From positions 186,001-250,000 of the IMG/VR virus record IMGVR_UViG_3300028666_000022: a DNA stretch of 64,000 nt. The stretch is one strand, 5' to 3'. Below the pieces are notes generated by a model. The model made no database searches and was not told the origin of the DNA. It was given only the letters and a program-made list of their open reading frames with translations. Below are positions 20,153-42,869 of this stretch, piece after piece. Both the position numbers and the translations under genes were made by a program. Within the stretch, counting starts at the first letter, position 1. Each line of letters opens with the position of its first letter.

Positions 20153-20794
20153 TTATTTACTGTTAGCAATAAAATGTGAATAGTAGGTGCTTGTCTTTAT
20201 ATTTTTAAAATAATATTTTTCATCATCCGAAATATTATTCATATCGGTATAATACCAAGGAACATGCCTAGCACAATAAGGAATATTAGTTCTTATACTA
20301 TTAAATGATTTAAGTCTTGTACGATATAAAGAAAATGTGGTATCTGTTGCAGCATCAAAATACATATCATCTAACGGTCTTGTCCAGTATCCACCTTCTG
20401 TTTTCCTAACAAAATTACTAAATTCAATATTAGGTAAATCATCTATTCTTAAAGATAATGCACATTTTTCATATTGAGGATATTTATCTAAACCTCTTCT
20501 TAGTACATCTAAGAAATCTTTAGGAACTCCAGTTAAATCTAAATCAGAATCTGTTACTATGTATTCATCATCTATTCCCAATTTAAATAATATTCCAGCA
20601 TCCCAAATAACTGTGTGACCAAAATTATGATCTAATAAAACCGTTTCATATTTACAATTTTTATAATAATCTAATAATGGTTGATATGTACTTGCATTGT
20701 CTATAAAAATAGGATCTACCCCACAATTATGTAAATAATCTGCCATTTTCATTGGCAACAATAATCGATTATTATTTATTATTAATGCTTTCAA
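20153..20794 (-). CDS. Glycosyltransferase family 2-like (GT-A fold), TTG start
   Basis: FIDNASTY, HNFGH, YIVTDSDL (DxD), DTTFSLY, HVPWY. Confidence 0.7.
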   Translation of the reverse strand: MKALIINNNRLLLPMKMADYLHNCGVDPIFIDNASTYQPLLDYYKNCKYETVLLDHNFGHTVIWDAGILFKLGIDDEYIVTDSDLDLTGVPKDFLDVLRRGLDKYPQYEKCALSLRIDDLPNIEFSNFVRKTEGGYWTRPLDDMYFDAATDTTFSLYRTRLKSFNSIRTNIPYCARHVPWYYTDMNNISDDEKYYFKNIKTSTYYSHFIANSK

Positions 20795-20808
20795 AATATT
20801 TTAAAATT

Positions 20809-21042
20809 TTAATATATAATATCCTTATCATTAATGCCTAACCAAAGCGTTCTTTGTAATACATCAATCATTTCTGGATTTCCATTACTATAACCACCAT
20901 TACTAAAAATATGCCAACCAGTTTTTCTTAAATAATTAACCATTTCTTCATCACATAAATTTATTTCTACATGATACTTATAATTTTCCCAACCATTTGG
21001 TAAAATTTCAGTATTTGTCATTCTAGGATCAAAAAAACTCAT
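20809..21042 (-). CDS. Hypothetical protein
   Basis: 77-aa ORF in operon. Confidence 0.5.
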   Translation of the reverse strand: MSFFDPRMTNTEILPNGWENYKYHVEINLCDEEMVNYLRKTGWHIFSNGGYSNGNPEMIDVLQRTLWLGINDKDIIY

Positions 21043-21043
21043 T

Positions 21044-21469
21044 TTATTTATTTTTAATTAATAATAAACCTTCATATAATCCAATTTCGAGTGCTTCTTC
21101 ATAAGAATCATAAGTAACATCATTTTTATCAAGATTAATAAACGCATAGAATTGTTTATAATTTACATAAAGATGATATTTACATTCAGAATTTTCATTA
21201 GTAGAATCAATTGCAAATGGAACTATAACAATTTGAATATTGTGTTTTTCTCTTAACCATTTTTGTAATAAACTCTGTTCTGGTGCTGCAATATATCCTC
21301 TATATTCTACACCATAATATCCACATAAATTAGAATAAACTTTCCATAAAGAGGGACTTCTTTCTTCATTATTAACAACAGGAATTCTATATTCCATTAC
21401 AGTTTCTTCATCAAATCCAACTTCTTTAGCTAATACTGCAGTTTTGTGTTCAATTATTTGGTTTTCCAT
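21044..21469 (-). CDS. Phage hypothetical protein
   Basis: TAVLAKEVGF...APEQSLLQKWLREKHNI...YDSYEEALEIGL; start taken as MENQ. Confidence 0.6.
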   Translation of the reverse strand: MENQIIEHKTAVLAKEVGFDEETVMEYRIPVVNNEERSPSLWKVYSNLCGYYGVEYRGYIAAPEQSLLQKWLREKHNIQIVIVPFAIDSTNENSECKYHLYVNYKQFYAFINLDKNDVTYDSYEEALEIGLYEGLLLIKNK

Positions 21470-21470
21470 T

Positions 21471-22091
21471 TTAATTATCATTCATTATTATTTCTTTATA
21501 TTCTTCAAAACTAACTAGTTGTAATAATTCTTTTCTATTTTTATCAAAATCTTCCCAATTAAGATTGTAGATATTATAATCTAACATTTTATTTTCTAAA
21601 ATATTTCTCTTCGTAATAATAGTACATCCCCAATCTTCATCAACAACAAAACAACTCCAATCTTTTAACTCATGTTTAATTAAAACAACTGCTTTATATA
21701 CATCACCATTCCATTGTCCTTTTGTTTTTAAATATTCTTCATAAGATCTTGCATGATATTCTGTTGGTGGATTACAATCGTGCATTATTATAAATCCACC
21801 TTCATTAAGACATTTTATTGCGTTATAGACATCCTTATATGATTGTTCTGCAGTATGCATTCCATCCACAAATATAACATCATATTTATTATTACCTACT
21901 CTATTATAAAAGAAATTATCACTAGTAGTAATATATGTACAATTACCAATAGGATTTGGATCTACCGATTCTTTTATTAAAGAATTTATTTTATCGAAAT
22001 TTTCTTCTGGCCTCTCTACACCAATTTCAAGATAGGTTTGAAAATTATACTTTTCAAATAGTAGATTAATTATTTCTGTTCTAGTTGTCAT
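21471..22091 (-). CDS. Class I SAM-dependent methyltransferase (Methyltransf_24-like)
   Basis: YLEIGV, SVDP, YDVIFVDGMH, GGFIIMHD. Confidence 0.85.
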   Translation of the reverse strand: MTTRTEIINLLFEKYNFQTYLEIGVERPEENFDKINSLIKESVDPNPIGNCTYITTSDNFFYNRVGNNKYDVIFVDGMHTAEQSYKDVYNAIKCLNEGGFIIMHDCNPPTEYHARSYEEYLKTKGQWNGDVYKAVVLIKHELKDWSCFVVDEDWGCTIITKRNILENKMLDYNIYNLNWEDFDKNRKELLQLVSFEEYKEIIMNDN

Positions 22092-22511: not shown

Positions 22512-23222
22512 TCATTTAATTCCATGTTTATTAAAAATATTTTCAATTATTTTAATATCTTCTTGATTTAACTCAGCTTCACCATATATTGATTTATGCC
22601 AATCTTTAAGTAATTTTCCATGTTCCATCACATGTCCGAGAGCAACTACAAAATTATTTACTGGAAGTAATATTGCTGCATTATCATATTTTGCAGTATC
22701 TCTAGTTTCCCATTGCCAAGGATTTATATTCTGAACTAAATATTTTTTAAAATATGATGTTTTCCATATTGAATATTGTAATGATAGTCGATAATCAGCA
22801 TTTTGATTTATTTCAGAAATATTATAATTACCAAAATTTTTAATACAACTACTTCCACCATAGAAATCTGAAGGTGTTTTTGTTAACCACATTCTTCCAA
22901 AATTTGGAATTTCTTTAATGGTTTTAATTATTTGATCTAAAAAATCATTATTAAATTCAGTAGTAACAACACAATCATCATTACCATAAATGAAATATTC
23001 ATCATTGAAATCATTAAAAAATTTAATTAAATCATTACTAAAATTCTGTGCTCCGGTATCTTCACCTAATGATATGAATTTCCAATTACCTAAATCAAAA
23101 TCTAATGTTTTATATCCTAAAACTGTAATATCTAATTCAGAACCACCAAATTTATCTAATGAATATTTATTAGCTTCTAAAATATTACGATATTTATCAC
23201 ATGTGGGAATTATTATTTTCAT
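22512..23222 (-). CDS. Putative glycosyltransferase (GT-A-like)
   Basis: IIIPTCDKY, YFIYGNDD, SLQYSIWK, NPWQWE; glycan-cluster context. Confidence 0.55.
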   Translation of the reverse strand: MKIIIPTCDKYRNILEANKYSLDKFGGSELDITVLGYKTLDFDLGNWKFISLGEDTGAQNFSNDLIKFFNDFNDEYFIYGNDDCVVTTEFNNDFLDQIIKTIKEIPNFGRMWLTKTPSDFYGGSSCIKNFGNYNISEINQNADYRLSLQYSIWKTSYFKKYLVQNINPWQWETRDTAKYDNAAILLPVNNFVVALGHVMEHGKLLKDWHKSIYGEAELNQEDIKIIENIFNKHGIK

Positions 23223-23233: not shown

Positions 23234-24211
23234 TTATTTCTTATCTTTAAGAATATTCATCCAATTATTCACCATATCTTTCATTAATTCTTCCACTGTT
23301 TGTTCTGGTTTCCAATTAAGAATAGTTTTAGCTTTAGTTGCATCACCTCGCAAATATGGTAATTCTTCTGAACGTAAATATATTGGATTTTGTACAACAT
23401 AATCTTTATAGTCCATATCTAAATATTTAAATACCATATCACATATTTCTCTAATTGATGTTGCTATTCCTGTTGCAATTACAAAATCATCAGGAACTTC
23501 ATGATTTACTATTTTCCACATAGCTTTAACATAATCAACACTAGAACCAAAATCCCTATATGTATCTAAATTACCTAATTCAATATTTTTTCTTAATCCC
23601 AATTTAATTTCTACCGCTTGCTTACATATTTTTTGTTCAACAAAATTTGAACCCCTTCTTACACCAGTGTGGTTAAAGAGAATTCCCACACATGCATGTA
23701 AATTATATGCTCTTCTAAAATGACGAACTAAATTAATTGAAGCAACTTTACTTATTCCATAAGGACTTGTTGGATTAAAAGGGGTGGTTTCTCTTTGATA
23801 TAAATCTTCATCTACATTTAAACCAAATGATTCTGAGCTTCCAGCAAAATAATATTTAGCATCAGGACAAATTAATTTATATCCCTCTAAAATATTTTGA
23901 TTTCCCTTAAAATTAACATCCATTACATAGGTTGGCACGTCAAAACTGACTCGTACATGGCTCATAGCCGCTAAATTAAAAATATAATCAGGATTTGAGT
24001 TTTTTAAAAATCTATTAACTGATACTGAATCAGTAACATCGCCATATTCACAATGAATTAAATTTTTAATGTGTTCTAATCTATATTGTTGATTTTCGGC
24101 AACACTATGTCTTCTGACCATTCCATATATGTTATGACCCATCGATAATAAGTAATCAGTTAGGTTACTGCCGTCCATGCCTGAAATTCCAAACAATGCA
24201 ATATTACTCAT
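23234..24211 (-). CDS. gmd: GDP-mannose 4,6-dehydratase
   Basis: GISGMDGS, NLAAMSHVRVSF, GSSESFG, ETTPFNPTSPYGISK, GILFNH, LGNLDTYRDFG. Confidence 0.92.
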   Translation of the reverse strand: MSNIALFGISGMDGSNLTDYLLSMGHNIYGMVRRHSVAENQQYRLEHIKNLIHCEYGDVTDSVSVNRFLKNSNPDYIFNLAAMSHVRVSFDVPTYVMDVNFKGNQNILEGYKLICPDAKYYFAGSSESFGLNVDEDLYQRETTPFNPTSPYGISKVASINLVRHFRRAYNLHACVGILFNHTGVRRGSNFVEQKICKQAVEIKLGLRKNIELGNLDTYRDFGSSVDYVKAMWKIVNHEVPDDFVIATGIATSIREICDMVFKYLDMDYKDYVVQNPIYLRSEELPYLRGDATKAKTILNWKPEQTVEELMKDMVNNWMNILKDKK

Positions 24212-24238: not shown

Positions 24239-25096
24239 TTAAGATGCTATATCTAAAGTATGTTTTTTACCACATCTTTTACATTTAAAAATTTCTAATT
24301 CAAATTTTTCTAAATTACGATGAATATCATCTATTAATTTTGTTTCAATAGGTTCATCATTTAACCAATCAATATCAGATTCTAAATTTAATAATTCTGG
24401 ACAAAAACACCAATCTGGATTATTCTTAATTTCTTCTTCTAATTGATATTTTTTTCTTATTTCTTTATTTAATTTCTTTTTGTTACTCATTTTATTATTT
24501 TTAAATATATCCATATTAGTTAAATCAGGCCAATCAGTAACAACCCATTGTTTAGGTGGAGTATTAATAGCATTATCTAATCTTTCTAATCCCAATTGTG
24601 CTGCTTCCGGTGTTAAATAATAGTGATAACCAATAGTATCAATATTTTGTTCTCTCCAAGGTATATCAGGTAATCTACCATCATATGAATTTTTTTTCAA
24701 TTCTAATGCAGCTTCTTTATTATCTGTTAAAATTATTCCAGCACGTCCAATTTTCAAATGTTTTCTATATTGGAAAGACAGTGACATGAAAGTATTTGGA
24801 ATATAACTATTTCTTTTCCAAAGAACTGCAGCATCAATTACTTTTTTAGTTAAATAATAATAATCAACCCAATTTTCATCTTTCCATTCTAAATTAATAT
24901 TTAATTTATGTGCTAAAAAGGGAATTGATAAATATGTTCTTTTAGGAACTGTTATTTTGGTTGCCTTTGTATGTCTTAAACATAATTCAATACCATGTGT
25001 ACATGAATCAACAGCAATTGCATATGGAGATCCAAAAAACTCACATATTTTATCTTCAAATAATTTTACTGTTTCAAAATTTATATTATTATTCAT
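24239..25096 (-). CDS. Short DegT/DnrJ/EryC1/StrS PLP aminotransferase with an unrelated C-terminal CxC/CxxC extension
   Basis: FEDKICEFFG, AVDSCTHGI, IDAAV, SFQYRKHLKIGRAG (PLP Lys), GYHYYL; second ATG at 24490 starts the extension. Confidence 0.8.
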   Translation of the reverse strand: MNNNINFETVKLFEDKICEFFGSPYAIAVDSCTHGIELCLRHTKATKITVPKRTYLSIPFLAHKLNINLEWKDENWVDYYYLTKKVIDAAVLWKRNSYIPNTFMSLSFQYRKHLKIGRAGIILTDNKEAALELKKNSYDGRLPDIPWREQNIDTIGYHYYLTPEAAQLGLERLDNAINTPPKQWVVTDWPDLTNMDIFKNNKMSNKKKLNKEIRKKYQLEEEIKNNPDWCFCPELLNLESDIDWLNDEPIETKLIDDIHRNLEKFELEIFKCKRCGKKHTLDIAS

Positions 25097-25294: not shown

Positions 25295-25492
25295 TTAATC
25301 TTTATTATTATCTTTTTTCTGAAAATCACCATCTGCATCACAATGTGACGGAGGATATCCAAGCTTTTTCAAACTATAGTGACGTAAAATTCTTTGTATT
25401 ATATTATAAATACCAGTAAAGATACCACCAATTAAAAACATAAATCCTAACCAAATCCAAAAATCACTAAAAATAAATTTTAATTCTTCCAT
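25295..25492 (-). CDS. Small membrane protein
   Basis: One TM segment followed by GYPPSHCDADGDF. Confidence 0.6.
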   Translation of the reverse strand: MEELKFIFSDFWIWLGFMFLIGGIFTGIYNIIQRILRHYSLKKLGYPPSHCDADGDFQKKDNNKD

Positions 25493-26097: not shown

Positions 26098-27821
26098 TTA
26101 AATAATATTATGTTCTCTTAAAATTTTCTCAATATTATCATAATCAAAATACGCAATTCTAATTAATTTAATATTTTTATCTTTAGCAAATTTATTTTTT
26201 ATTTCATCATTAATTTGTAGTTCTTTAAATTTTTCTTCTCCACCGAAATGTTTAATAATTTTATAATGTTGTATACCGTCAAATTCAATTAGAATGTTTT
26301 GTTCTGGTAAATAAAAATCAAATGGTAAAGATTTTTTATTTCTGCAATTTTCAAATTTTTTTTGATAAATAAAATTTATATTATTTTCTTTTAAAATTTC
26401 AGAAATTTTATTTTCACCCTTTGATTCGTTACATTTAGGACAACAATTATCACGATTTATAAAATTAATGTAACTTACATACCAAATATGATTATCTTTA
26501 TTACATCTTAAATGAATTTTTGTTTGATTATTTTTATATAAAAATTTTTCTATTAATTCATAATTTTTCTTTTTGCATTTATTTAGAACATTTTTTTCTG
26601 CTTCTTCTTGTGTTATTTTTAAAACATTAACACATTTAGAACATCCATGATCTTGACTCACAAAACTACTATAAATTGTTTTCCATATATAATTATCTTT
26701 TTTACATTTTAAATAAATAGTTGTTTCATTATTCACATATATAAAATTTTCAACTAATTCATAGTTTTTTTCTTTACATTTTTTCAAAACTTTTTCTTCA
26801 GCTTCTTGTTGTGTTATTTTTATACTATTTCCACATTTAGGACAACCTTGATTTTGATTAATAAAATTATCATATTTAACATTCCACACATAATTATCTT
26901 TATTACATTTTAAATGAATTTTTGTTTGGTTATTTTCATATGAAAAGTTTTCAACTAAGGTATAGTTTTTTTCTATACATTTTTTTCTGCTTCTCCTTGT
27001 GTTATTTTTGAAACATTACCACATTTAGGACATCCACTTTTATTATGAATAAAACTATCGTATGTTGGTGTCCATTTATACTCATCAATAGTACATTTTA
27101 AATGAATTTTTGTTTTTGTACCTTTATAAATAAATTTATCAAATAAAACATATTTTTTTTCTTTACATTTTTCTAAAACTCTTTCTTCGGCTTCTTGTTG
27201 TGTTATTTTTAAATTTCCATTACATTTAGGACAACCTTGATTTTTATTTATAAATTTATTATATCTTACAAACCATTCATGTTTATCTTTATTACATTTT
27301 AAATGAATTTTTGTTTTATGGTTTTTATAAATAAAATTTTCAACTAATATATAGTTTTTTTCTTTGCACTTTATTAAAACTTTTTTCTCTGCTTCTTCTT
27401 GTGTTATTAATGGTCTATTACCACATTTAGGACATCCACTTTTACTATGAATAAAACTATCATAAATTATATTCCATATATAATTATCTTTATTACATTT
27501 TAAGTGAATTATAGTATCGTTATTAACATATATAAAATTTTTAATTAATTCATAATTTTTTTCTTTACATTTCTCTAAAACTTTTTGTTCGGCTTCTTGT
27601 TGTGTTAATCTTAAGTTTCCACTACATTTAGGGCATCCTTGATTCTTACTAAGAAAATTATTATAAGTTACATACCAATCATACTTATCTTTGTTACATT
27701 TTAAATGAATTTTTGTTTTATTATTTTTATATGAAAAATTTTCAACAAGAATATAGTTTCTTTTCTCACACTTTTTAAAAACATTTTCTTCTGCTTCTTG
27801 TTGTGTTAATTTCTTTAACAT
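26098..27821 (-). pseudogene. Frameshift-split endonuclease: seven ~67-aa Zn-ribbon repeats plus C-terminal PD-(D/E)xK/Vsr-like nuclease
   Basis: ORFs 26973..27821 (4 CPKC repeats) and 26098..26889 (3 repeats + SKGENKI...LPFDFYLP...LIEFDGIQH) join in the -1 frame at the A7 run 26980-26986. Confidence 0.75.
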
Positions 27822-36464: not shown

Positions 36465-37460
36465 TCATTTTTTTAAAAAACCACCATTCATTAGTAATTT
36501 ATAAAGATAATTCTCATCTTTAATATTGTCTGCTGATGAAAATTCTATAAAATTAACTTTTTTATTTTTTTCTATATGTGAATAATCTTTATTTATTTTT
36601 ATTGAAGGTAAAATTATAAAATAATTTTCATTAAAAATATAAGATTTTTGAGATTCATGTTCTGATATTAATACTTCATGTATTTTTTCACCTTCTCTTA
36701 TACCAACTTCCTCAATAATAGTATCTTTATTACCATAATAATCAACCAATGCTTTACCCAAATCTTTAATATAAAAACTAGGCATATTCATAACAAACGT
36801 TTCTCCACCAATACTATTTTCAACTGCTTGAAATAATAATTCAATTGCTTCTGAAAGTGTTAAGAAAAATCTTGTCATTATGTTACTAGTTATAGTAATT
36901 TTATTATTCGTTTTGATTTGATCAATAAAATATGGCACAACACTACCATTAGATCCTAAAACATTTCCACCTCTTATACAAACAAAATTAGTATCAGTTG
37001 TTAAATTATTTGCTTGAATTGTTAATTTTTCACCAACTGCTTTAGTTAATCCATATAAATTATTTGGACTGACCGATTTATCTGTTGATACATCAATAAA
37101 ATATTTTATTTTATATTTAATTGCTGAATTAATTAAATTAATTGTACCATTTATATTTGTTTTAATTGCTTCTTGGGGTAAATTTTCACAAATAGGAACA
37201 TGTTTAAGTGCAGCTAAATGAAAAACATAATCAATATTGTTATTACTAAACAATCTATCTACTGCTTCAGCATCTCTAATATCACCAATAACATATTCAA
37301 TTATTTTATTATTAAATTTTCTTTGCATATTTACCTGCGCAAATTCACCTCTTGAAAAAATTATTATTTTCTTAGGATTTTTTAATAATAATTGTTTTGT
37401 TAATTCGTTTCCCCATGAACCAGAACCACCATCAATTAATATTGTTTTATTTTTAAACAT
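36465..37460 (-). CDS. UDP-GlcNAc 4,6-dehydratase (FnlA/CapE/PseB family)
   Basis: GGSGSWG, IIFSRGE, IGDIRD, HLAALKHVP, STDKS, YGLTK, RGGNVLGSNGSV, MTRFFL, GEKIHE. Confidence 0.88.
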   Translation of the reverse strand: MFKNKTILIDGGSGSWGNELTKQLLLKNPKKIIIFSRGEFAQVNMQRKFNNKIIEYVIGDIRDAEAVDRLFSNNNIDYVFHLAALKHVPICENLPQEAIKTNINGTINLINSAIKYKIKYFIDVSTDKSVSPNNLYGLTKAVGEKLTIQANNLTTDTNFVCIRGGNVLGSNGSVVPYFIDQIKTNNKITITSNIMTRFFLTLSEAIELLFQAVENSIGGETFVMNMPSFYIKDLGKALVDYYGNKDTIIEEVGIREGEKIHEVLISEHESQKSYIFNENYFIILPSIKINKDYSHIEKNKKVNFIEFSSADNIKDENYLYKLLMNGGFLKK

Positions 37461-37463: not shown

Positions 37464-38234
37464 TTATATTTTAATAAAATTCGGATATTTTATTACCCAT
37501 TCTTTTAATTCTTTATGATTTACTTCTTCTAAAGAAACGAATCTTTTTTTAAAGATTTCATCATTTCTATTAAATAGATCAATACCACTTTCCAAACATT
37601 TTATAATATGTTCTTCATTATTTATTTCAACATTATTTGTTTGTATTTCAGAATATGATTCTAATTTTAATTTAATTCTATCTTTATCACCAAGAAAACT
37701 ATAATGCCAACCACCATTATTAATTATCTTAATATCTCTACCACTAAATAAACGAGTATCTTGTGGTGATTTTACGTATTTTTTCTTGATTACTACTGTA
37801 CCAAACCATTCTTGATTTTGTATGCAATTCACATAATAATAAAACAATTTTTGTTTTAATTTAAAAATATCATAATTATTATTAATTCCTTCTAATATTG
37901 CATCTGGATTAGGAATTTCATCAACATCTGAAATAATAATATAATCATTGTCATTTGCTGAACTTAAACCTTGAATAATTAGATTTCTATTATAGAACTC
38001 ATTTTCCCATGCATCACTATATGGTAATTTATCTACACTAATATAAATTATCTTATCTGAATATTTTTCAAATAAATTTTTATTCTTTTCATAATACATT
38101 TCTTTTTCATTTCCAGTAAATGTTGTTCCTGCTTCAACTAATACAAAATAATCAACCACATTATATAATGTCATCAACCTAAGTTCTAATAACTCAAGTT
38201 CATTAAAAAATATAAAACAGTCAAAAATTTTCAT
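37464..38234 (-). CDS. Glycosyltransferase family 17 (GlcNAc-transferase-like)
   Basis: IFDCFIFFNELELLELR, VDYFVLVEA, TFTG, ISDVDEIP, GGWHYSF. Confidence 0.85.
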   Translation of the reverse strand: MKIFDCFIFFNELELLELRLMTLYNVVDYFVLVEAGTTFTGNEKEMYYEKNKNLFEKYSDKIIYISVDKLPYSDAWENEFYNRNLIIQGLSSANDNDYIIISDVDEIPNPDAILEGINNNYDIFKLKQKLFYYYVNCIQNQEWFGTVVIKKKYVKSPQDTRLFSGRDIKIINNGGWHYSFLGDKDRIKLKLESYSEIQTNNVEINNEEHIIKCLESGIDLFNRNDEIFKKRFVSLEEVNHKELKEWVIKYPNFIKI

Positions 38235-38240: not shown

Positions 38241-39317
38241 CTATATTTTTCCTAACAAAACATTAATTATTATGTCTGAAACATTTTCAATCAAATAACC
38301 ATCGGGTACAATCCATTTATTTTTTCTTTTATTTATTATATTATATGCTTCAATAATATTTTCTGTTTTCGTACCACACAATATACTTGAACCGCATTCA
38401 ATTAATTCTTGTCTTTCAGTATATTCTCTAATTACTAATGATGGTATGCCAAAAATACATCCCTCTTCTGGTGTGGTTCCCGAATCACTTATTATACATT
38501 TAGCGTTTCTTTCTAATTTAACAAAGTCAAAGAATCCAAACGGTTCAGAAACAATAATATCTTCATTTAATTTTATGTTAAATAATTTAAGTTTATTTCT
38601 AGTTCTAGGATGTATCGAAAATACTATTTTTTCTTTACTATCTTTATCTATAATATTAATTGCATTTATGATATTTCTTAATGTTTCTTCATTATCTACA
38701 TTTTCAGAACGGTGTGCAGTAACCAAAACATATTCATTTGAATAAAGATTTAATTTTTTTAAAATATCACTATTACTAATATCAAAACTATAATTTTCTA
38801 ATACTTCAAATATTGGATTGCCTGTTTTAAACACATTATTTTTACTAAATCCAATATCTAAAAGATTTTGTTTACTATTTTCGATATAAGGAAGATTATA
38901 CGTTGATACATTATCAATTATTCTCCTATTCATTTCTTCTGGAACTCTATTATCAAAAGCTCTATTACCTGCTTCCATGTGATATACTGGAATTTTATGT
39001 TTTGCAGCAACAATAGCAAGCAATGCTGAATTAGTATCTCCAAGAATTAATATTTTGTCTGGTTTTTCTTTTATTAATATTTTTTCAAATTCAATAATAG
39101 CATTTCCTAAAAAATCTCCAAATGATTTACTCTCGTGTTCAAAATAATAATCTGGTTTTCTAATTCTTAGTTCATTGAAAAATATTTTACTTAAATTATA
39201 ATCAAAATTTTGATTAGTATAAACCAAAACATGATCAACCAGTTTGTTTAATTTTTCTACTATTACTGATAAACGTATGATTTCTGGTCGAGTACCAATT
39301 AATGTTAATATTTTCAA
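38241..39317 (-). CDS. Non-hydrolysing UDP-HexNAc 2-epimerase (FnlC/WbjD-like), TTG start
   Basis: GTRPEIIR, LGDTNS, HMEAGNRAFD, TGNP, TAHRSEN, HPR, SDSGT, RQE. Confidence 0.88.
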   Translation of the reverse strand: MKILTLIGTRPEIIRLSVIVEKLNKLVDHVLVYTNQNFDYNLSKIFFNELRIRKPDYYFEHESKSFGDFLGNAIIEFEKILIKEKPDKILILGDTNSALLAIVAAKHKIPVYHMEAGNRAFDNRVPEEMNRRIIDNVSTYNLPYIENSKQNLLDIGFSKNNVFKTGNPIFEVLENYSFDISNSDILKKLNLYSNEYVLVTAHRSENVDNEETLRNIINAINIIDKDSKEKIVFSIHPRTRNKLKLFNIKLNEDIIVSEPFGFFDFVKLERNAKCIISDSGTTPEEGCIFGIPSLVIREYTERQELIECGSSILCGTKTENIIEAYNIINKRKNKWIVPDGYLIENVSDIIINVLLGKI

Positions 39318-39339
39318 AATATTTTAAATTTTATTATAT

Positions 39340-41256
39340 TTATTTTTTATTTACTTCGTAATCAGTTTCTAATGTAGTGACTCCATAATATAATAATCTA
39401 TTTTTATTACGTAACTCATCAAGATTAGGCATTGAATAAAATGCTCTTGGATGATATTGATGTACAACTGAAATATCATCAGAAATACTTAAATTTAACC
39501 CCAATCTTTTTATTCTTAATAAGAATTCATTATCATCATATTCAATTCCCTTTGCATATCTTTCATCAAAACCACCTAATTTTTTCATGTTTTTTCTAGT
39601 CATTGCTGAACAAAAATGATAATAACATGGTCTATGTTTTGAATGATTATACCAACCAACATCATTTGTTATTCCTTGTGGCAATGTTTTTAATAAATTA
39701 GGAATTGTATTATTTTCACAATATTTATATAATTCATTTGTTAATTTTTCATCTAATGAAAATGTTGACATAGTAATATACTTAGTATCATCAATATTTT
39801 TATTAACATAACTAAGTACATCATGAACATGTAAACATTCAGGATTTTGAATTATAATTATATCCCCAACAGCAGCTCGTATTCCAACATTAAATGGTAC
39901 ACAAGGATTGACATACCATTTATCTTCTTTTTCTAATCTAATTATCTTTAAAAATGAAAATTCTTCAAGATATTCTTCTAATCTATGTTCTGGTGAACTA
40001 CAATCATCAACAACAATTAATTCAAAATTTTTAAATTCTGATTTTTCGATAGATTTAAGTGTTTCAAAAAACTGCTTCTTTCTATCGAAATAAGATGTGA
40101 TAATCGATATTTTTGGTTTTTGGTTTTTAATTAAAATACAACCATTTTTATCTGTTTTTGTTTTAATTACTTCGTTAGCAATTTTAGAAAATGTTGTTTT
40201 ATATTCATTATGATTATTTTCATTTAAAATATTATTATATTTTTGTGATGTAGCATGTCCACCATACCAATGATAACCAATAGAATTTAAATTAAATTCA
40301 TTAATACCTAATGATCTACTAAAACTATAATCAACTTTAGTCCAATCTAAACCATATAATAATGTTGTCGATAAATTATAAAACTTTAAATTAGAATATT
40401 TTGAAATTATTTTATTATATATTTGAGTAAAAGGGCTATGACCAAATTTTTTATAAATTAAATGAACACCCATCGATTGATAATCACTTTCATTATAATT
40501 ATTTACACCAAATTCAAATAATTTTTTATAATATTCATTATTAATTGATGCGCCTAAAAATCCTATAGTTAACCACCAAACCTTATAATCTGTTTTAGAT
40601 TGATATTCATGGATTATTGTATCATAACCACCATCAACAATTTTATTATAAAAATCATCTATCGGTCTAAAAAACAACACGTCCATATCACAATAAAATC
40701 CACCACCAACGAATAATTGATAATATCTAAATAAATCGCTTTCGTGTACTGGTGATATATTTTTTAATTTATCTTGTACTTCTTTGGGAAACTCAACCAT
40801 TTCTATTTTAATATTTAATTCTTTAAGTTTACTAAAATAACTACTACCAGTATACATATAATAATCTTGTTCATCTGTTCCTTTCCATGCTTTATCTTTT
40901 ACATTATTATTTGATACAAATAAAGTAATATCCCAATCTGGATTCATTTTTCTAAATGAAAATATTGTCATATATCTCATCCAAGATAAATCACAACCAC
41001 TCCAATAAAAAAATATTTTTTTTGGTATTTTTCTCGATAAAGAAAAAGTATTAACTTTTTTTATTTCAATAATTTCTTTTTGTTCTATATTTGCTGATAT
41101 AACAGGAGCTTTAGGTTTACCGTATATTCTTAATTTATCTGCTTCATCCATTTTTTTATTCTCTTTTTTATCAATAAAAATTCCTTGCTTATTTCTAAAT
41201 TCTATATTTTTTTTTATTTGATTTTTTAAATTAAACCTTTCTTTTTTTACTCCCAT
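39340..41256 (-). CDS. Fused glycosyltransferase (GT32/DXD-type plus GT2)
   Basis: IPKKIFFYW, SDLFRY, GGFYCDMD; then ISIITS, IVVDDCS, LGGFDE, YDDNEF, VHQYH. Confidence 0.85.
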   Translation of the reverse strand: MGVKKERFNLKNQIKKNIEFRNKQGIFIDKKENKKMDEADKLRIYGKPKAPVISANIEQKEIIEIKKVNTFSLSRKIPKKIFFYWSGCDLSWMRYMTIFSFRKMNPDWDITLFVSNNNVKDKAWKGTDEQDYYMYTGSSYFSKLKELNIKIEMVEFPKEVQDKLKNISPVHESDLFRYYQLFVGGGFYCDMDVLFFRPIDDFYNKIVDGGYDTIIHEYQSKTDYKVWWLTIGFLGASINNEYYKKLFEFGVNNYNESDYQSMGVHLIYKKFGHSPFTQIYNKIISKYSNLKFYNLSTTLLYGLDWTKVDYSFSRSLGINEFNLNSIGYHWYGGHATSQKYNNILNENNHNEYKTTFSKIANEVIKTKTDKNGCILIKNQKPKISIITSYFDRKKQFFETLKSIEKSEFKNFELIVVDDCSSPEHRLEEYLEEFSFLKIIRLEKEDKWYVNPCVPFNVGIRAAVGDIIIIQNPECLHVHDVLSYVNKNIDDTKYITMSTFSLDEKLTNELYKYCENNTIPNLLKTLPQGITNDVGWYNHSKHRPCYYHFCSAMTRKNMKKLGGFDERYAKGIEYDDNEFLLRIKRLGLNLSISDDISVVHQYHPRAFYSMPNLDELRNKNRLLYYGVTTLETDYEVNKK

Positions 41257-42869
41257 GTCTCATTTATAACATTTTCATATAATTCTAATATTTTTTTAGT
41301 TGAATAATTACTATGATATTTTATAACATCTTTTGGAACTTCTTGTAATTCTTTACTTAAAATATTACCCTCTTTATCTACACTATAAATAATTCCGGGT
41401 TTTCCACATAAAAATCCTTCTATTGTTGTTCGACCTTTAAATATTCCTGCAGTATAATCACATTTTTTTAAATAATCTTCAACGTTTGATTTAACTCCCA
41501 AATATTTTACGTGTTGATTATTTAAATCAAGTAATTCATTAATGTAATCATTATTATCTGCACCGATAATCCAAAGTTCTTGATTATTTTCTTTTGTTGT
41601 TTGAATCAAATCTATTATAATATTTTTTCTCAAATGATCTAATGTTCCTATAAATAGTACTACTTCTTTTTCATTTTTTATTTGTTTATACTTAGTATTA
41701 AACCTATTAGAATCAAACGGATTATCTATTTCAACAATATTTTCTTCATCAATACCAAAATTTTTAATATAATTAGTAATTGATTCTCTAATTGAAATAT
41801 ATTTTTTTATTGTTGGATTAATAATTGGTTCTTCAAATACTGGAATAACTTCACTTCTTACATGCATAACTGCAGGAGTATTTGGTATTAATTGTAATAT
41901 TAACTCACCAATAGGTTTATGATTAATATGTATTATATCAAATTCAACTTCATTTTTAATAAAATTAAATCTACCTTCTTGATCTAAAATATAATTAGGT
42001 AAATTTGCATATGAATATACTTTAACACCATTTTTTCTTGCTTTATCATATAAAGGATTACCAACAACAGATGATATAATTGTAACATCACACCCTAATT
42101 TAACTAATTCTTTTGATAACTCATAGTTTGAAACTTCTGAACCAGTATAATTTTTAAAAAATTGACAACAAATTAATACTCTTAACTTATCTTCAGAAAC
42201 ATGTCTTATTGGTAAATCATATTCTTTTACAAATTTTTGTCTATTCTCTTCCCAACTTTGATTAGTTATTCCAATAGATTTATGTAAAACTCTTATTGAG
42301 GTAATTACTCCTATGTTATTGTTACTCAGATAGTTATCTACTACGAAGGAATGATCATAATAGTGGTACTTACCATAATTTTCATTAAATTTATTCGTAA
42401 TTTTATTACAATCAACAGCCATAAATAATCCATCAATTGTTACAACTGGTTTTATTCCTTTATATTCATTTGAATATTCACTTACCCAAGTATTAATACC
42501 ATCTGAATGTTCTACCACCCCCACCATTTTACTGCGATCGCTCCAAAATACAGCACTATCACTCATAAACGTACTACCTGCAACACCTAATATAGAATAA
42601 TCACTATTATTAAAATAATTTAATAATATTTTACCCCAATTATTTGTTTTTATAATTATATCGTTATGACAAAATACCATTATAGAATTTTCAGTATTAT
42701 GTTCTTCAATAGCTTTATTATAAATTTCAGATAGTGAATATTGATTATAGTTAGTATAACATATTACTTTATGTTTTACACCAACAGTACTATCTATGTG
42801 TTTAATAAATTTTTGATTCTCATCATCAGAAAGATGCGAGGAAAATACGACAACTATATTATTCTTCAT
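41247..42869 (-). CDS. Fused glycosyltransferase (GT-A domain plus GT4-like domain)
   Basis: LSEIYN, VFCHNDI, LGVAG, IDGLFMA, YHYYD; then TGSE, NPFD, LFIG, GRTTIEG. Confidence 0.8.
   Translation of the reverse strand: MKNNIVVVFSSHLSDDENQKFIKHIDSTVGVKHKVICYTNYNQYSLSEIYNKAIEEHNTENSIMVFCHNDIIIKTNNWGKILLNYFNNSDYSILGVAGSTFMSDSAVFWSDRSKMVGVVEHSDGINTWVSEYSNEYKGIKPVVTIDGLFMAVDCNKITNKFNENYGKYHYYDHSFVVDNYLSNNNIGVITSIRVLHKSIGITNQSWEENRQKFVKEYDLPIRHVSEDKLRVLICCQFFKNYTGSEVSNYELSKELVKLGCDVTIISSVVGNPLYDKARKNGVKVYSYANLPNYILDQEGRFNFIKNEVEFDIIHINHKPIGELILQLIPNTPAVMHVRSEVIPVFEEPIINPTIKKYISIRESITNYIKNFGIDEENIVEIDNPFDSNRFNTKYKQIKNEKEVVLFIGTLDHLRKNIIIDLIQTTKENNQELWIIGADNNDYINELLDLNNQHVKYLGVKSNVEDYLKKCDYTAGIFKGRTTIEGFLCGKPGIIYSVDKEGNILSKELQEVPKDVIKYHSNYSTKKILELYENVINETWE

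What the first reader, a model, noticed from the sequence alone, without database searches (positions are those of the whole stretch)
20153..42869. ~23-kb phage-encoded glycan biosynthesis cluster with no export or polymerase genes
Seen: roughly ten GT or GT-like domains (GT2, GT17, GT32-like, GT4-like, fusions), nucleotide-sugar enzymes (Gmd, DegT, FnlA-like, RmlD-like, FnlC-like, cupin), two SAM methyltransferases, a WcbI-like protein and an LbH acyltransferase. All are co-oriented directly downstream of tail genes. I see no Wzx, Wzy, Wzz, ABC exporter or polyprenyl-phosphate initiating transferase, and the GTs appear soluble. Inference: the product is a cytoplasmically assembled, methylated and acylated oligosaccharide on a phage substrate, most simply virion proteins, rather than host O-antigen conversion. 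DNA hypermodification is the alternative.
Basis: partly seen in the sequence, partly recalled or inferred. Interest (0 to 1): 0.8.

Follow-up and report, generated by a model that had tools for sequence, protein, structure and literature searches.

The report
Hypervariable sugar-building island in jumbo phage
A 340-kb uncultured soil phage carries a real 23-kb block of sugar-making and sugar-joining genes with no membrane, export or polymerase parts. Related phages hold a different gene set at the same spot behind one conserved first enzyme, so each phage probably builds its own glycan inside the cell, though what the glycan is attached to remains unknown.

Summary
Window 19910-42869 (minus strand) is a contiguous, co-oriented glycan cluster. 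It has 6 HMM-supported glycosyltransferase (GT) domains in 4 proteins, one more GT-A by predicted fold, and two ORFs that look GT-like by motif only. It also encodes a UDP-HexNAc 6-deoxy-sugar trio, a GMD/short DegT-like/cupin/LbH module, WcbI, and two SAM methyltransferases.

No protein in the cluster has two or more hydrophobic segments. The same is true of 390 ORFs in 47 related islands. The window is part of a 339,898-bp phage contig from a rhizosphere metagenome and is not a chimera.

In more than 100 related contigs the same site lies between baseplate genes and a conserved 211-aa gene. It holds 4 to more than 20 kb of different glycan genes. Only an N-terminal ~220-aa GT-A domain is invariant.

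A strand-specific promoter-like motif that precedes tail genes also heads this transcription unit.

Cytoplasmic assembly is well supported. The acceptor is not settled:
- virion protein, about 0.4, the most likely;
- DNA, about 0.07.

This is a new variant of a known kind.

The parts
41247..42869 (-). Conserved two-domain glycosyltransferase: N-terminal GT-A (Glyco_tranf_2_5, residues about 1-220) plus C-terminal GT-B (GT4/GT1). It is a core gene of the phage lineage and the proposed conserved first step.
   Evidence: Pfam. AF2 model pLDDT 85 with generic GT-A and GT4 fold hits. 1683 homologues, of which the top 120 are 63-74% identical with the same architecture. In relatives only the GT-A domain is invariant: it stands alone or is fused to other C-terminal domains.
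39340..41256 (-). Two-domain glycosyltransferase: GT32-like Gly_transf_sug (DXD) plus GT2 with a GT7C-like tail.
   Evidence: Pfam. Found in only 2 related loci.
38241..39317 (-). Non-hydrolysing UDP-GlcNAc 2-epimerase (WecB/FnlC/CapG type).
   Evidence: Pfam Epimerase_2 E=7e-90. NCBIfam wecB 264.8 bits, above the 210 cut-off.
37464..38234 (-). GT17-family glycosyltransferase.
   Evidence: Pfam Glyco_transf_17 E=4e-32. No homologue in the sampled relatives.
36465..37460 (-). UDP-GlcNAc inverting 4,6-dehydratase (PseB/FnlA/CapE type).
   Evidence: Pfam Polysacc_synt_2 E=2e-94. NCBIfam PseB 307 bits and FnlA 226 bits, both below the equivalog cut-offs. 77-78% identical copies in L101 and L129.
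35619..36458 (-). RmlD-like NAD(P)-dependent sugar reductase (FnlB/CapF/Mg535-like role inferred).
   Evidence: Pfam RmlD_sub_bind E=1e-19. NCBIfam rmlD 55.6 bits, below cut-off.
34133..35626 (-). GT2 glycosyltransferase with an uncharacterised C-terminal half of about 350 aa.
   Evidence: Pfam.
33696..34124 (-). Probable cupin; possible sugar 3,4-ketoisomerase or epimerase.
   Evidence: No Pfam hit. Weak PHROG cupin-type hit, E=0.048. HxH-type motif in the sequence. Sits in a compact cupin-LbH-DegT-GMD-GT block in relative L099.
32870..33703 (-). WcbI-like polysaccharide-modification protein.
   Evidence: Pfam WcbI E=3e-23.
31934..32869 (-). Beta-ketoacyl-ACP synthase III (FabH).
   Evidence: Pfam. 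NCBIfam PRK09352 303 bits, above the 249 cut-off. Best bacterial match among the candidate stretches the genome scan retrieved is only 36% identical.
31024..31599 (-). MT-A70 N6-adenine methyltransferase. Probably a hitch-hiker cassette together with the flanking ORFs 31614-31877 and 30650-31027, not a glycan enzyme.
   Evidence: Pfam MT-A70 E=6e-27. Absent from all sampled relatives.
29923..30618 (-). SAM-dependent methyltransferase (sugar O- or N-methylation inferred).
   Evidence: Pfam Methyltransf_23/31/11.
29059..29871 (-). Unknown 270-aa protein with a DxD-type motif; possible GT-A, unverified.
   Evidence: No Pfam, PHROG or PDB-sequence hit. Motif read from the sequence.
28408..29052 (-). 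FabG-like short-chain dehydrogenase (3-oxoacyl reductase type).
   Evidence: Pfam adh_short_C2 E=6e-26. NCBIfam 3-oxoacyl-ACP reductase 104 bits, below cut-off.
27856..28407 (-). Left-handed beta-helix acyltransferase (WbbJ/NeuD/PglB/VioB-like).
   Evidence: Pfam Hexapep. NCBIfam weak hits.
26098..27821 (-). Two paralogous CapR / treble-clef zinc-finger / DUF723 genes built from 201-nt repeats. Mobile nuclease-like insertions that interrupt the cluster.
   Evidence: Pfam. Repeat family D1. Homologues lie elsewhere and on the other strand in relatives.
24239..25096 (-). Short DegT/DnrJ-like protein (possible sugar aminotransferase) with a C-terminal Zn-ribbon-like extension.
   Evidence: Pfam DegT E=1.5e-12, but only partial profile coverage. 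NCBIfam weak. 75% identical shorter copy in L099.
23234..24211 (-). GDP-mannose 4,6-dehydratase-like enzyme. Could instead act on a GDP-heptose.
   Evidence: Pfam GDP_Man_Dehyd E=4e-91. NCBIfam gmd 296 bits, below the 415 cut-off.
22512..23222 (-). GT-A-fold glycosyltransferase of a virus-only family.
   Evidence: No Pfam hit. ESM Atlas model pTM 0.88 matches GT2 clusters at TM 0.59-0.76. Follows GMD in L099 as well.
21471..22091 (-). SAM methyltransferase (Methyltransf_24 class).
   Evidence: Pfam.
19910..21481 (-). Four island ORFs of unknown role: 21044-21481 (phrog_12005), 20809-21042, 20153-20794 (GT2-like N-terminus and DSD motif, unverified) and 19910-20152.
   Evidence: None has a homologue in the sampled relatives.
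42926..51077 (-). Upstream conserved baseplate/tail module: hub 50145-51077, tape-measure-like 47392-49914, 1088-aa protein 43297-46563, 104-aa wedge-like protein 42926-43240.
   Evidence: PHROGs. PF12322 T4_baseplate. 4 TM segments and coiled coil in the 840-aa protein. Syntenic in 10-25 related loci.
46577..46585 (-). Promoter-like motif GTATTTATA, 14 nt upstream of the 1088-aa gene. The next copies on this strand are at 25405-25413 (inside the island) and 19255-19263.
   Evidence: 11 copies against 3.9 expected. 272 against 17 strand bias in relatives. Also precedes the tail sheath gene. No terminator-like site between 46563 and 37400.
19274..19909 (-). Conserved 211-aa gene that marks the downstream border of the island. 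Not a glycan gene.
   Evidence: Present in 77 related loci at 53-74% identity. AF2 pLDDT 83.5 with only weak RNase H-like / 3'-5' exonuclease hints.

Best explanation
This is a phage-autonomous, cytoplasmic glycan-assembly island in a ~340-kb jumbo myovirus-like phage.

Shown:
- The island encodes enzymes for at least two activated rare sugars, plus tailoring enzymes and GT domains.
- Sugar 1 is a UDP-2-acetamido-2,6-dideoxy-L-hexose of the L-RhaNAc/L-QuiNAc/L-FucNAc type. It would be made by the dehydratase 36465, the reductase 35619 and the 2-epimerase 38241.
- Sugar 2 is a GDP-linked 6-deoxy amino sugar. It would be made by the GMD-like enzyme 23234, the cupin 33696 and the short DegT-like protein 24239.
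- Tailoring enzymes are an LbH acyltransferase, FabH plus a FabG-like reductase, two SAM methyltransferases and WcbI.
- Seven to nine soluble GT domains are present.
- No membrane, carrier-lipid, flippase, polymerase or exporter protein is present.
- Across the lineage the island content is replaced wholesale. One N-terminal GT-A domain, always the first gene after the baseplate genes, is kept.

Inferred:
- FabH and the FabG-like reductase probably supply a short 3-hydroxyacyl group for N-acylation of the amino sugar.
- The conserved GT-A puts the first sugar on an acceptor that is itself conserved in the lineage. The variable enzymes then extend and decorate it, giving each phage its own methylated, acylated oligosaccharide.
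- The unit is transcribed together with tail genes from a late-type promoter.
- The acceptor is most likely a phage-encoded, probably virion, protein. This would parallel Megavirinae fibril glycosylation, mycobacteriophage capsid and tail-tube glycosylation, and bacterial flagellin glycosylation islands.
For: Gene content:
-.

No membrane components:
- No multi-TM protein in the window cluster.
- None in 390 ORFs of 47 non-redundant related islands.
- The 8 ORFs with one marginal hydrophobic stretch are soluble enzymes or have no family hit. None is a Bac_transf phosphoglycosyl transferase.

Phage identity and integrity:
- The contig is 339,898 bp.
- GC is uniform at 21-26%.
- Conserved phage genes lie on both sides in the same order in dozens of independent contigs.
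- Identical sequence tiles occur in three other rhizosphere samples.

Hypervariability:
- Flank genes are found in 77-130 loci, island genes in 0-8.
- 404 island proteins (390 from the related islands plus the window's own) fall into 132 families, 76 of them singletons.
- Island length ranges from 4 to more than 20 kb.

Conserved priming domain:
-.

Late-type expression:
- The GTATTTATA motif is enriched (11 copies against 3.9 expected).
- It is strand-specific: 272 against 17.
- It precedes the tape-measure, baseplate and sheath genes and endonuclease VII.
- It never precedes recombinase or exonuclease orthologues.
- It heads the unit that runs into the island, with gaps of 56 nt or less and no terminator-like site.

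Analogy with proven cytoplasmic protein glycosylation:
- Megavirinae clusters have 6-33 genes between conserved genes, are clade-specific, and contain multi-domain GTs and the same Mg534/535/536-type trio (PMC10117803).
- Flagellin glycosylation islands lie next to the structural gene and are highly variable. They carry DegT, SAM/FkbM methyltransferases, WbbJ/NeuD acetyltransferases, formyltransferases and FabG/ACP genes (PMC4875605).
- Eleven related islands carry a GT-D/DUF1792-like GT. Its only solved relative, 4PHR, belongs (from my own knowledge, not checked here) to a cytoplasmic protein O-glycosylation pathway; the Megavirinae paper lists 4PHR only as a Streptococcus GT.
- Mycobacteriophage virion glycosylation is reported in the literature (ref. 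45 of PMC12619734).
Against: - No acceptor was identified. No structural protein in view has an obvious glycosylation-prone tail.
- The adjacent tail proteins are internal types (hub, tape measure).
- The island lies at a module boundary, where accessory genes often accumulate, so its position is weak evidence.
- The GT folds are generic and do not indicate a protein acceptor.
- The conserved GT-A family also occurs in LOS outer-core loci, in a bacterial locus with an ABC transporter, and next to replication genes in another phage.
- Most relatives encode a heptose-nucleotide pathway typical of LPS cores.
- The promoter class is inferred from a motif only. No RNA run was listed.
- About 256 kb of the genome was not examined.
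Confidence: 0.42

Rival explanations
1. Remodelling of the host envelope. The soluble phage GTs act at the inner face of the host membrane on a host lipid-linked acceptor. That acceptor would be lipid A-core, as in LOS outer-core loci, or a host undecaprenyl-PP-sugar. The host's own MsbA/Lpt, Wzx/Wzy or ABC machinery would then export the altered glycan. The effect would be to change the cell surface, for example to block superinfection or to stop progeny sticking to debris.
For: - LOS-type assembly needs no dedicated flippase, polymerase or initiating transferase, so the absence of such genes is expected under this model too.
- PF13712 GT-A proteins are recorded in Acinetobacter LOS outer-core loci.
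- 20-32 of the related islands encode a PfkB kinase, a HAD phosphatase, a nucleotidyltransferase and an epimerase. Together these are a heptose-nucleotide pathway typical of LPS inner cores.
- All the sugars inferred are classic O-antigen or capsule sugars.
- Large cyanomyoviruses carry 13-24 such genes, which are conventionally read as host-surface modification (PMC12801897; P-SSM2 hits).
Against: - The conserved GT is a core gene of a lytic-type jumbo lineage rather than an accessory moron.
- The unit appears to be driven by the promoter class of tail genes, which is late for surface remodelling.
- Multi-domain GT fusions, many sugar methyltransferases and GT-D enzymes are more typical of viral and flagellar protein glycosylation than of core-oligosaccharide loci.
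- A novel repeat unit would be a poor substrate for the host Wzx/Wzy.
- The host, and even whether it is Gram-negative, is unknown.
Confidence: 0.3
2. DNA hypermodification. The GTs build a glycan on a hydroxymethylated or otherwise activated base of phage DNA to block host nucleases.
For: - Phage GTs that put mono- to trisaccharides on 5hmC are known (Pyle 2024, cited as ref. 46 in PMC12619734).
- The island borders the DNA-metabolism module.
- A distant PF13712 homologue sits next to RecA, dNMP kinase and DnaB in another phage contig.
- An MT-A70 DNA methyltransferase lies inside the island.
Against: - No thymidylate-synthase-like hydroxymethylase, 5mC dioxygenase, cytosine methyltransferase or dNMP kinase is found in the 64-kb window or about 20 kb of flanks.
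- Seven to nine GT domains, plus N-acylation and O-methylation, far exceed any known DNA glycan.
- MT-A70 is unique to this one island.
- The motif-defined promoter class is shared with tail genes, not replication genes.
- Standard short-read assemblies from several samples reproduce the sequence without trouble. This is weak evidence.
Confidence: 0.07
3. Another cytoplasmic product. Candidates are a free or lipid-free methylated oligo- or polysaccharide, glycosylation of a non-virion phage protein, or glycosylation of a host protein as a takeover function.
For: - All enzymes are soluble.
- One top fold hit is a mycobacterial methylmannose-polysaccharide mannosyltransferase, which makes a cytoplasmic polymethylated glycan.
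- Methyltransferases are abundant in the islands.
Against: - Hypervariability between close relatives suggests diversifying selection on an exposed structure, not on an internal metabolite.
- The fold hit is generic GT4.
- No precedent exists in phages.
Confidence: 0.1
4. Assembly chimera or host contamination. The glycan genes are bacterial DNA mis-joined into a phage contig.
For: - Logan contigs of the source sample break around 25.5-27.3 kb.
- Many of the genes are bacterial-type enzymes.
Against: - The breaks coincide with the 201-nt CapR repeats.
- GC is 21-26% throughout.
- Both flanks are conserved phage genes in the order and orientation seen in dozens of independent contigs that also carry glycan genes at this site.
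- Three contigs carry the identical GT.
- Three other samples give identical tiles across 26.0-31.4 kb.
- The best bacterial FabH match among the candidate stretches the genome scan retrieved is only 36% identical.
Confidence: 0.01

Closest known systems
Megavirinae (Mimivirus/Megavirus/Moumouvirus/Tupanvirus) fibril glycosylation gene clusters (PMC10117803)
   Same: - Virus-encoded clusters of nucleotide-sugar pathways plus multi-domain soluble GTs and tailoring enzymes.
- Comparable size: 6-33 genes there, about 25 here.
- Located between conserved genes, with clade-specific replacement of the content.
- Bacterial-type rare sugars.
- The same dehydratase/reductase/2-epimerase trio as Mg534/535/536 (L-RhaNAc/L-QuiNAc).
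- GT-D (4PHR-like) GTs occur there and in this phage's relatives.
   Different: - The host there is a eukaryote that lacks these sugars, and the product is proven on capsid fibrils. Here the host is a bacterium that could itself use such sugars, and the acceptor is unknown.
- No sequence-level orthology was shown. Fold hits to giant-virus GTs are generic.
- This lineage has an invariant first GT-A domain.
Bacterial flagellin glycosylation islands (PMC4875605)
   Same: - Lie next to genes for an assembled extracellular structure.
- Highly variable between close relatives and built from exchangeable modules.
- The same enzyme mix: GTs, DegT aminotransferases, SAM/FkbM methyltransferases, WbbJ/NeuD acyltransferases, formyltransferases and fatty-acid-synthesis genes.
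- Cytoplasmic O-glycosylation without flippase or polymerase.
   Different: - They are cellular, not viral.
- Their priming enzymes are Maf/GT41/TPR-type GTs that recognise flagellin. No TPR or GT41 domain is found here.
- Their acceptor gene is adjacent and known.
Mycobacteriophage virion glycosylation (Freeman et al. 2023, cited through PMC12619734 ref. 45)
   Same: Phage-encoded GTs modify phage structural proteins in the cytoplasm. It is the only proven bacteriophage precedent for the favoured reading.
   Different: - Those systems have a few genes (about 2-4 GTs or methyltransferases) and use host sugar nucleotides. Here about 25 genes include complete sugar pathways.
- The paper itself could not be read here.
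'LPS/cell-wall' gene clusters of large cyanomyoviruses (P-SSM2, S-SCSM1, S-SCSM2R; PMC12801897)
   Same: - Large T4-like or jumbo phages carrying 13-24 GT and sugar-nucleotide genes of unproven function.
- Sugar epimerase/dehydratase homologues are shared at low identity, 26-31%.
   Different: - A different phage lineage: no match of the core GT or tail proteins in GenBank phages.
- The cyanophage genes are scattered in several clusters. Here there is a single island at a fixed site with a conserved first enzyme.
Serotype-converting prophage modules (Gtr, Oac, Wzy-alpha types) and O-antigen/capsule loci
   Same: Phage or locus-encoded glycan diversity, and some of the same sugar pathways.
   Different: Those depend on integral membrane proteins (GtrA/B/C, Oac, Wzx, Wzy, Wzm/Wzt, WecA/WbaP). 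None is present here or in 47 related islands.
Moraphages: aquatic jumbo phages of Bacteroidota (PMC12619734)
   Same: - Uncultured jumbo phages of 200-307 kb.
- Four core orthogroups are putative GTs.
- Multiple homing endonucleases.
- The nearest cultured relative of the present phage by recombinase is a Flavobacterium phage, at 33% identity.
   Different: Membership was not tested because no sequences were available. The present contig is larger (340 kb) and comes from rhizosphere and peat.

Membership tests
Wzx/Wzy- or ABC-transporter-dependent O-antigen/capsule locus (including serotype conversion) | Integral-membrane flippase, polymerase or chain-length regulator, or Wzm/Wzt exporter | tested here: not met
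   No protein with two or more hydrophobic segments between 422 and 46563. None in 390 ORFs of 47 related islands. No such Pfam family.
Wzx/Wzy- or ABC-transporter-dependent O-antigen/capsule locus (including serotype conversion) | Polyprenyl-phosphate initiating transferase (WecA/MraY-type or WbaP/PglC Bac_transf) | tested here: not met
   No Glycos_transf_4 or Bac_transf hit. The ORFs with a single N-terminal hydrophobic stretch in relatives are LbH, epimerase or formyltransferase enzymes, or have no hit.
Virus-autonomous glycosylation cluster (Megavirinae type) | Clustered nucleotide-sugar pathways plus multi-domain soluble GTs and tailoring enzymes in a viral genome | tested here: met
   Viral context.
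Virus-autonomous glycosylation cluster (Megavirinae type) | Fixed genomic site between conserved genes, with lineage-specific content | tested here: met
   Compare PMC10117803.
Virus-autonomous glycosylation cluster (Megavirinae type) | Glycan demonstrated on virion proteins | not testable with these tools
   Needs virions, glycan staining and MS/NMR.
Flagellin-glycosylation-island-like cytoplasmic O-glycosylation | A priming GT that recognises a specific structural protein (Maf/GT41/TPR type), with the acceptor gene adjacent | tested here: inconclusive
   The enzyme mix matches. However, no TPR, GT41 or Maf domain is present, the acceptor is unknown, and the neighbouring tail proteins are internal types.
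LOS/LPS outer-core-type locus | Only soluble or peripheral GTs and sugar enzymes, with no dedicated export genes | tested here: met
   The PF13712 family occurs in Acinetobacter OC loci.
LOS/LPS outer-core-type locus | Acceptor is lipid A-core of a Gram-negative host | not testable with these tools
   The host is unknown. The FabH search gave no close bacterial relative.
Glycosylated-base DNA hypermodification system | A base-activating enzyme (dCMP/dUMP hydroxymethylase, 5mC dioxygenase plus cytosine methyltransferase) and often a dNMP kinase | tested here: inconclusive
   None found in the window or in about 20 kb of extra flank. About 256 kb of the contig was not seen.
UDP-L-FucNAc / L-RhaNAc / L-QuiNAc pathway (FnlABC, CapEFG, Mg534-536) | Inverting 4,6-dehydratase/5-epimerase, reductase and non-hydrolysing 2-epimerase encoded together | tested here: met
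   36465-37460, 35619-36458 and 38241-39317. Only the 2-epimerase passes an equivalog cut-off, so the exact sugar is not determined.
GDP-perosamine-type N-acyl amino sugar pathway | GMD, a full-length PLP aminotransferase and an N-acyltransferase | tested here: inconclusive
   GMD-like scores below the equivalog cut-off. The DegT-like protein is truncated relative to the 360-position profile. LbH is present. The compact module is conserved in L099.

The most novel reading that the evidence does not exclude
A widespread, uncultured lineage of ~300-360-kb soil and freshwater jumbo phages has its own complete, cytoplasmic protein-glycosylation machinery. One invariant GT-A domain primes a conserved virion protein. 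A swappable 4-21-kb cassette then builds a phage-specific methylated, acylated glycan coat. This would be the bacteriophage counterpart of the giant-virus fibril 'glycosylation toolbox', and by far the most complex virion glycosylation system known in a bacterial virus.
Probability: 0.4. Interest if true: 0.8.

Novelty: new variant of a known kind. Interest (0 to 1): 0.62.

Why it matters
Large phages have been known for twenty years to carry 'LPS-like' gene sets whose purpose is unproven.

This lineage offers an unusually clean natural experiment:
- a fixed site in the genome;
- one invariant first enzyme;
- hundreds of natural cassette variants;
- no membrane components.

The long-standing question of what phage-encoded glycan clusters glycosylate becomes directly testable with a single conserved GT-A domain and a small set of candidate acceptors.

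If the target is the virion, complex self-made glycan coats are not limited to giant eukaryotic viruses. They would become a general feature of very large viruses, with consequences for host recognition, particle stability and grazing in soil.

If the target is host LPS, it would be the first large lytic-phage system shown to re-tailor the envelope without any membrane enzyme of its own.

Either way, the islands are a rich source of soluble GTs, sugar methyltransferases and rare-sugar pathways.

Tried and rejected
- Megablast of the cluster, and tblastn of the 1088-aa protein and the conserved GT, against 50,697 GenBank phages gave no match. The lineage is not among deposited phages.
- The sigma-70 promoter and intrinsic-terminator scans were at or below chance and uninformative, apart from one terminator-like hairpin at 49974-49950.
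- I predicted the structure of the conserved GT in the hope of an acceptor clue. Only generic GT-A and GT4 matches came back.
- I tested the conserved 211-aa border protein as a possible partner or acceptor. It has no confident fold match and only weak RNase H-like hints, so I rejected it as a glycan component.
- The Atlas search with the 1088-aa protein found only lineage-specific clusters.
- I attempted host inference from the recently acquired FabH in 185,579 species genomes. The best of the retrieved candidate stretches was 36% identical, so the host was not inferable.
- I considered the 87-aa ORF 31614-31877 and other small ORFs as an ACP. I rejected this on sequence, since none has a DSL-type motif or a family hit.
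- No RNA run holding the GT gene was listed, so expression could not be checked.
- No tRNA and no Rfam family was found in the window.
- Walking along the contig gains only about 10 kb per look-up, and one step failed because of a GTG start. I saw only about 20 kb beyond the window. The genome-wide check for exporters or base-modifying enzymes therefore remains undone.
- Sequence searches of 29059-29871 and 20153-20794 against PDB chains gave nothing, so their GT nature stays unverified.
- The Freeman 2023, Pyle 2024 and Arora 2001 papers are not held. They are cited only second-hand or from memory.

Full report
**1. What is in the sequence**

- The window is AT-rich (GC 21-32%, island 21-26%). 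All genes from 422 to 51077 are on the minus strand.
- HMM scans of every ORF of 80 aa or more between 17.6 and 42.9 kb confirm a dense, co-oriented glycan cluster.
- In the direction of transcription it contains:
  - a GT-A(Glyco_tranf_2_5)+GT-B(GT4) fusion (41247-42869);
  - a GT32-like+GT2 fusion (39340-41256);
  - a WecB-type UDP-GlcNAc 2-epimerase (38241-39317, above the equivalog cut-off);
  - a GT17 (37464-38234);
  - a PseB/FnlA-type inverting 4,6-dehydratase (36465-37460);
  - an RmlD-like reductase (35619-36458);
  - a GT2 (34133-35626);
  - a probable cupin (33696-34124);
  - WcbI (32870-33703);
  - FabH (31934-32869, above cut-off);
  - an MT-A70 DNA methyltransferase flanked by two small unknown ORFs (30650-31877);
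  - a SAM methyltransferase (29923-30618);
  - an unknown DxD protein (29059-29871);
  - a FabG-like reductase (28408-29052);
  - an LbH acyltransferase (27856-28407);
  - two CapR/zinc-finger/DUF723 repeat genes (26098-27821);
  - several small ORFs;
  - a short DegT-like protein (24239-25096);
  - a GMD-like dehydratase (23234-24211);
  - a GT-A-fold protein (22512-23222; Atlas model pTM 0.88, TM 0.59-0.76 to GT2 clusters);
  - a second SAM methyltransferase (21471-22091);
  - four unknown ORFs down to 19910.
'About ten GT domains' is generous: six by HMM, one by fold and two by motif only.
- There is no acyl carrier protein.

**2. No membrane machinery, here or in relatives**

- A Kyte-Doolittle scan finds no convincing transmembrane segment in any cluster protein of 80 aa or more. 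The only multi-TM protein on that strand is the tape-measure-like 840-aa protein.
- One 65-aa ORF (25295-25492) has a single hydrophobic helix.
- I then collected the same genomic site from related contigs. I extracted 47 non-redundant islands with 390 ORFs.
  - None has two or more hydrophobic segments.
  - Eight have one marginal stretch. Seven of the eight were scanned with Pfam: five are soluble enzymes (an LbH, two epimerases, a formyltransferase and a GT-D-like GT) and two have no family hit. The eighth is the NAD-dependent epimerase already scanned. No Bac_transf/PglC-type transferase appears.
- The 'no export, no polymerase, no initiating transferase' observation is thus a property of the whole lineage.

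**3. It is a phage and not a chimera**

- The window is positions 186,001-250,000 of a 339,898-bp contig: IMG/VR UViG_3300028666_000022, which is JGI Ga0265336_10000007.
- Upstream lie a T4-type baseplate hub, a tape-measure-like protein, a 1088-aa baseplate-type protein and a small wedge-like protein.
- Downstream lie a conserved 211-aa gene, other conserved unknowns, a UvsX-like recombinase, a 5'-3' exonuclease and an intein-bearing DnaB helicase.
- Just outside the window are a DNA ligase and the tail sheath.
- The source is a rhizosphere metagenome.
  - Three other rhizosphere samples yield contigs identical to the window across 26.0-31.4 kb.
  - The only assembly breaks coincide with 201-nt repeats inside the CapR genes.
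- Three contigs encode the identical first GT.
- The nearest deposited phage is a Flavobacterium phage, at 33% recombinase identity.
- The lineage may be related to the recently named 'moraphages' (PMC12619734). I could not test that.

**4. The key new result: a hypervariable island behind an invariant enzyme**

- In dozens of independent contigs the order is: hub, tape measure, 1088-aa, 104-aa, GT, [island], 211-aa gene, and so on to the recombinase. This order is conserved.
- Flanking genes recur in 77-130 loci at 55-80% identity. Island genes of the window recur in 0-8 loci. FabH, WcbI, GT17, the FabG-like reductase, MT-A70 and one methyltransferase recur in none.
- Island length ranges from about 4 kb to more than 20 kb. 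The window's is among the largest.
- The 404 island proteins (390 from the related islands plus the window's own) fall into 132 families, 76 of them singletons.
- The window's island is a mosaic.
  - Its FnlA/RmlD/WecB block is shared with L101 and L129.
  - Its cupin-LbH-DegT-GMD-GT block is a compact unit in L099.
  - In the window that block has been split by the acyl and methyl genes and by mobile genes.
- Most relatives instead encode a heptose-nucleotide pathway: a PfkB kinase, a HAD phosphatase, a nucleotidyltransferase sometimes fused to an FkbM methyltransferase, and an NAD epimerase. They also carry cupins, many methyltransferases, small GT2s, a formyltransferase, and in 11 loci a GT-D/DUF1792-like GT (Pfam 26.3 bits; profile top PDB hit 4PHR, E=0.0045).
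- The first GT has 1683 homologues. The top 120 are 63-74% identical.
- Only its N-terminal ~220-aa GT-A domain is invariant. In relatives that domain stands alone (228 aa) or is fused to different C-terminal domains (434-704 aa).
- This is the signature of a conserved priming step on a conserved acceptor, followed by free diversification.

**5. Expression class (inferred)**

- While listing intergenic regions I noticed the 9-mer GTATTTATA.
- It occurs 11 times in the window against 3.9±2.0 expected.
- In 2.03 Mb of related loci it occurs 272 times on the gene strand against 17 on the other strand.
- It sits 12-60 nt upstream of the tape-measure-like gene (also in 9 of 10 relatives), the 1088-aa gene, the hub, endonuclease VII, the tail sheath and a fibre-like gene.
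- It never sits upstream of the recombinase (0 of 92) or the exonuclease (0 of 80).
- A terminator-like hairpin followed by this motif separates the hub and tape-measure genes.
- On the island's strand the motif occurs at 46577-46585, then only at 25405-25413 and 19255-19263.
- The gaps between the 1088-aa gene, the 104-aa gene and the first GT are 56 nt, and no terminator-like site lies between them.
- The island is therefore probably transcribed with tail genes. That points to a late, assembly-time role. It rests on a motif, not on RNA data; no RNA run was listed.

**6. Mechanism**

Shown by family assignment:
- a route to a UDP-2-acetamido-2,6-dideoxy-L-hexose. This is the same enzyme trio as S. 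aureus CapEFG and Megavirus Mg534-536 (PMC10117803);
- a route from a GDP-hexose or GDP-heptose to a 6-deoxy amino sugar.

Inferred:
- FabH and the FabG-like reductase supply a short 3-hydroxyacyl unit, on host ACP or CoA, which the LbH enzyme puts on the amino group.
- The two SAM methyltransferases and WcbI add O-methyl and possibly O-acyl groups.
- The conserved GT-A primes the acceptor, and the other six to eight GT domains extend the chain.

**7. What is glycosylated?**

- The folds of the first GT are generic.
- The 211-aa border protein is not a glycan component.
- For a phage (virion) protein acceptor:
  - the core-gene status of the priming domain;
  - the tail-type promoter class;
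  - hypervariability typical of exposed structures;
  - multi-domain GT fusions;
  - the abundance of methyltransferases;
  - GT-D enzymes;
  - the close match in composition and population behaviour to Megavirinae fibril clusters and flagellin glycosylation islands, both proven cytoplasmic protein-glycosylation systems;
  - the mycobacteriophage precedent.
- For a host lipid acceptor:
  - LOS outer-core loci likewise have only soluble GTs and need no dedicated export;
  - the PF13712 family occurs in such loci;
  - heptose-nucleotide pathways dominate the relatives;
  - cyanophage clusters are conventionally read this way.
- For DNA:
  - the evidence is only positional, namely the border with the DNA module and a distant homologue next to RecA, dNMP kinase and DnaB;
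  - no base-activating enzyme was seen in about 84 kb;
  - the glycan would be far more complex than any known DNA modification.
- My estimates are: phage or virion protein 0.42, host envelope 0.30, other cytoplasmic product 0.10, DNA 0.07, artefact 0.01. The rest is unassigned.

**8. Novelty and verdict**

- Large glycan gene sets in big phages are known (cyanomyoviruses), as are virion glycosylation in mycobacteriophages and autonomous glycosylation in giant viruses.
- New here:
  - the lineage;
  - the size and completeness of the cluster;
  - the lineage-wide absence of membrane parts;
  - the architecture of an invariant priming GT-A domain followed by a swappable cassette at a fixed site next to the baseplate genes.
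- I class it as a new variant of a known kind, with interest 0.62.

Noticed in passing
window 46577-46585, 49930-49938, 51109-51117, 25405-25413, 19255-19263, 15578-15586, 14079-14087, 3871-3879 (minus strand); 56452-56460 (plus strand); L160 14811 and 15017: The 9-mer GTATTTATA is strand-specific and promoter-like. It occurs 11 times against 3.9 expected in the window, and 272 against 17 by strand in relatives. It sits upstream of tail, baseplate and sheath genes and endonuclease VII, and never upstream of recombinase or exonuclease orthologues. It is probably the late-promoter element of this lineage.
   Followed up: partly
window 26098-27821: Two paralogous genes are made of 201-nt (67-aa) CapR/treble-clef zinc-finger repeats, and one has a nuclease-like C-terminus. 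Homologues sit at other sites and on the other strand in relatives, so they look mobile. They also break short-read assemblies.
   Followed up: partly
window 30650-31877: An MT-A70 N6-adenine methyltransferase with two small unknown flanking ORFs is inserted in the middle of the glycan island. It is absent from all sampled relatives.
   Followed up: partly
window 3959-6820: The DnaB-like replicative helicase is interrupted by a LAGLIDADG-type intein. Its hits to intein-bearing terminases and helicases are explained by the intein.
   Followed up: no
window 54051-54869 (+): A further small GT2-like gene lies outside the island, in the divergent plus-strand block. It scores 23.4 bits, just at the Pfam cut-off.
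   Followed up: no
window 46564-47391: An 828-bp stretch between the tape-measure-like gene and the 1088-aa gene has no ORF and 18% GC. Patches of it are 70-88% conserved in relatives. It has no Rfam match and its function is unknown.
   Followed up: partly
window 24239-25096: The DegT-like protein is only 285 aa. It appears to keep PLP-lysine-like and Asp-Ala-Ala-like motifs but lacks about 70-100 residues of the canonical fold, and it ends in a Zn-ribbon-like tail. A 75% identical shorter form in L099 suggests it is functional, not a pseudogene.
   Followed up: partly
window 25295-25492: A 65-aa ORF with a single strongly hydrophobic helix is the only membrane-type sequence in the island. 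It overlaps the internal promoter-like motif.
   Followed up: no
L097:336-1088, L122:4081-6121, L126:8332-8616, L108:1375-1749 and equivalents in 20-32 loci: Most related islands encode a heptose-nucleotide-type pathway instead of the window's sugar modules. It comprises a PfkB-like kinase, a HAD phosphatase, a nucleotidyltransferase sometimes fused to an FkbM methyltransferase, an NAD epimerase and a cupin.
   Followed up: partly
L107:2082-2807, L147:2949-3674 and 9 other loci; L151:213-1067: Eleven related loci carry a GT-D/DUF1792-like glycosyltransferase family (top PDB hit 4PHR), and one carries a sugar formyltransferase. Both are features shared with giant-virus clusters and flagellin glycosylation clusters.
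   Followed up: partly
L161 (Logan SRR29340339 contig) and L162 (Logan SRR17165154 contig): Distant PF13712 GT-A homologues occur in two other settings. One is a tandem GT directly after RecA, dNMP kinase, exonuclease and DnaB in another phage-like contig. The other is a 1954-aa multi-GT/TPR/GT41 protein beside an ABC transporter in a bacterial-type contig.
   Followed up: no
window 61149-63365: Two adjacent homing-endonuclease-type genes: DUF7487/HNH-like (510 aa) and GIY-YIG/NUMOD (about 210-219 aa). A further NUMOD endonuclease lies left of the window (L153 15619-16575).
   Followed up: no
window 17658-18143: A conserved 161-aa protein (84 loci) has weak metallopeptidase-type hits (Tox-MPTase3 and Peptidase_M91, E about 1e-3). 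It may be a zinc peptidase, and it is intact.
   Followed up: no
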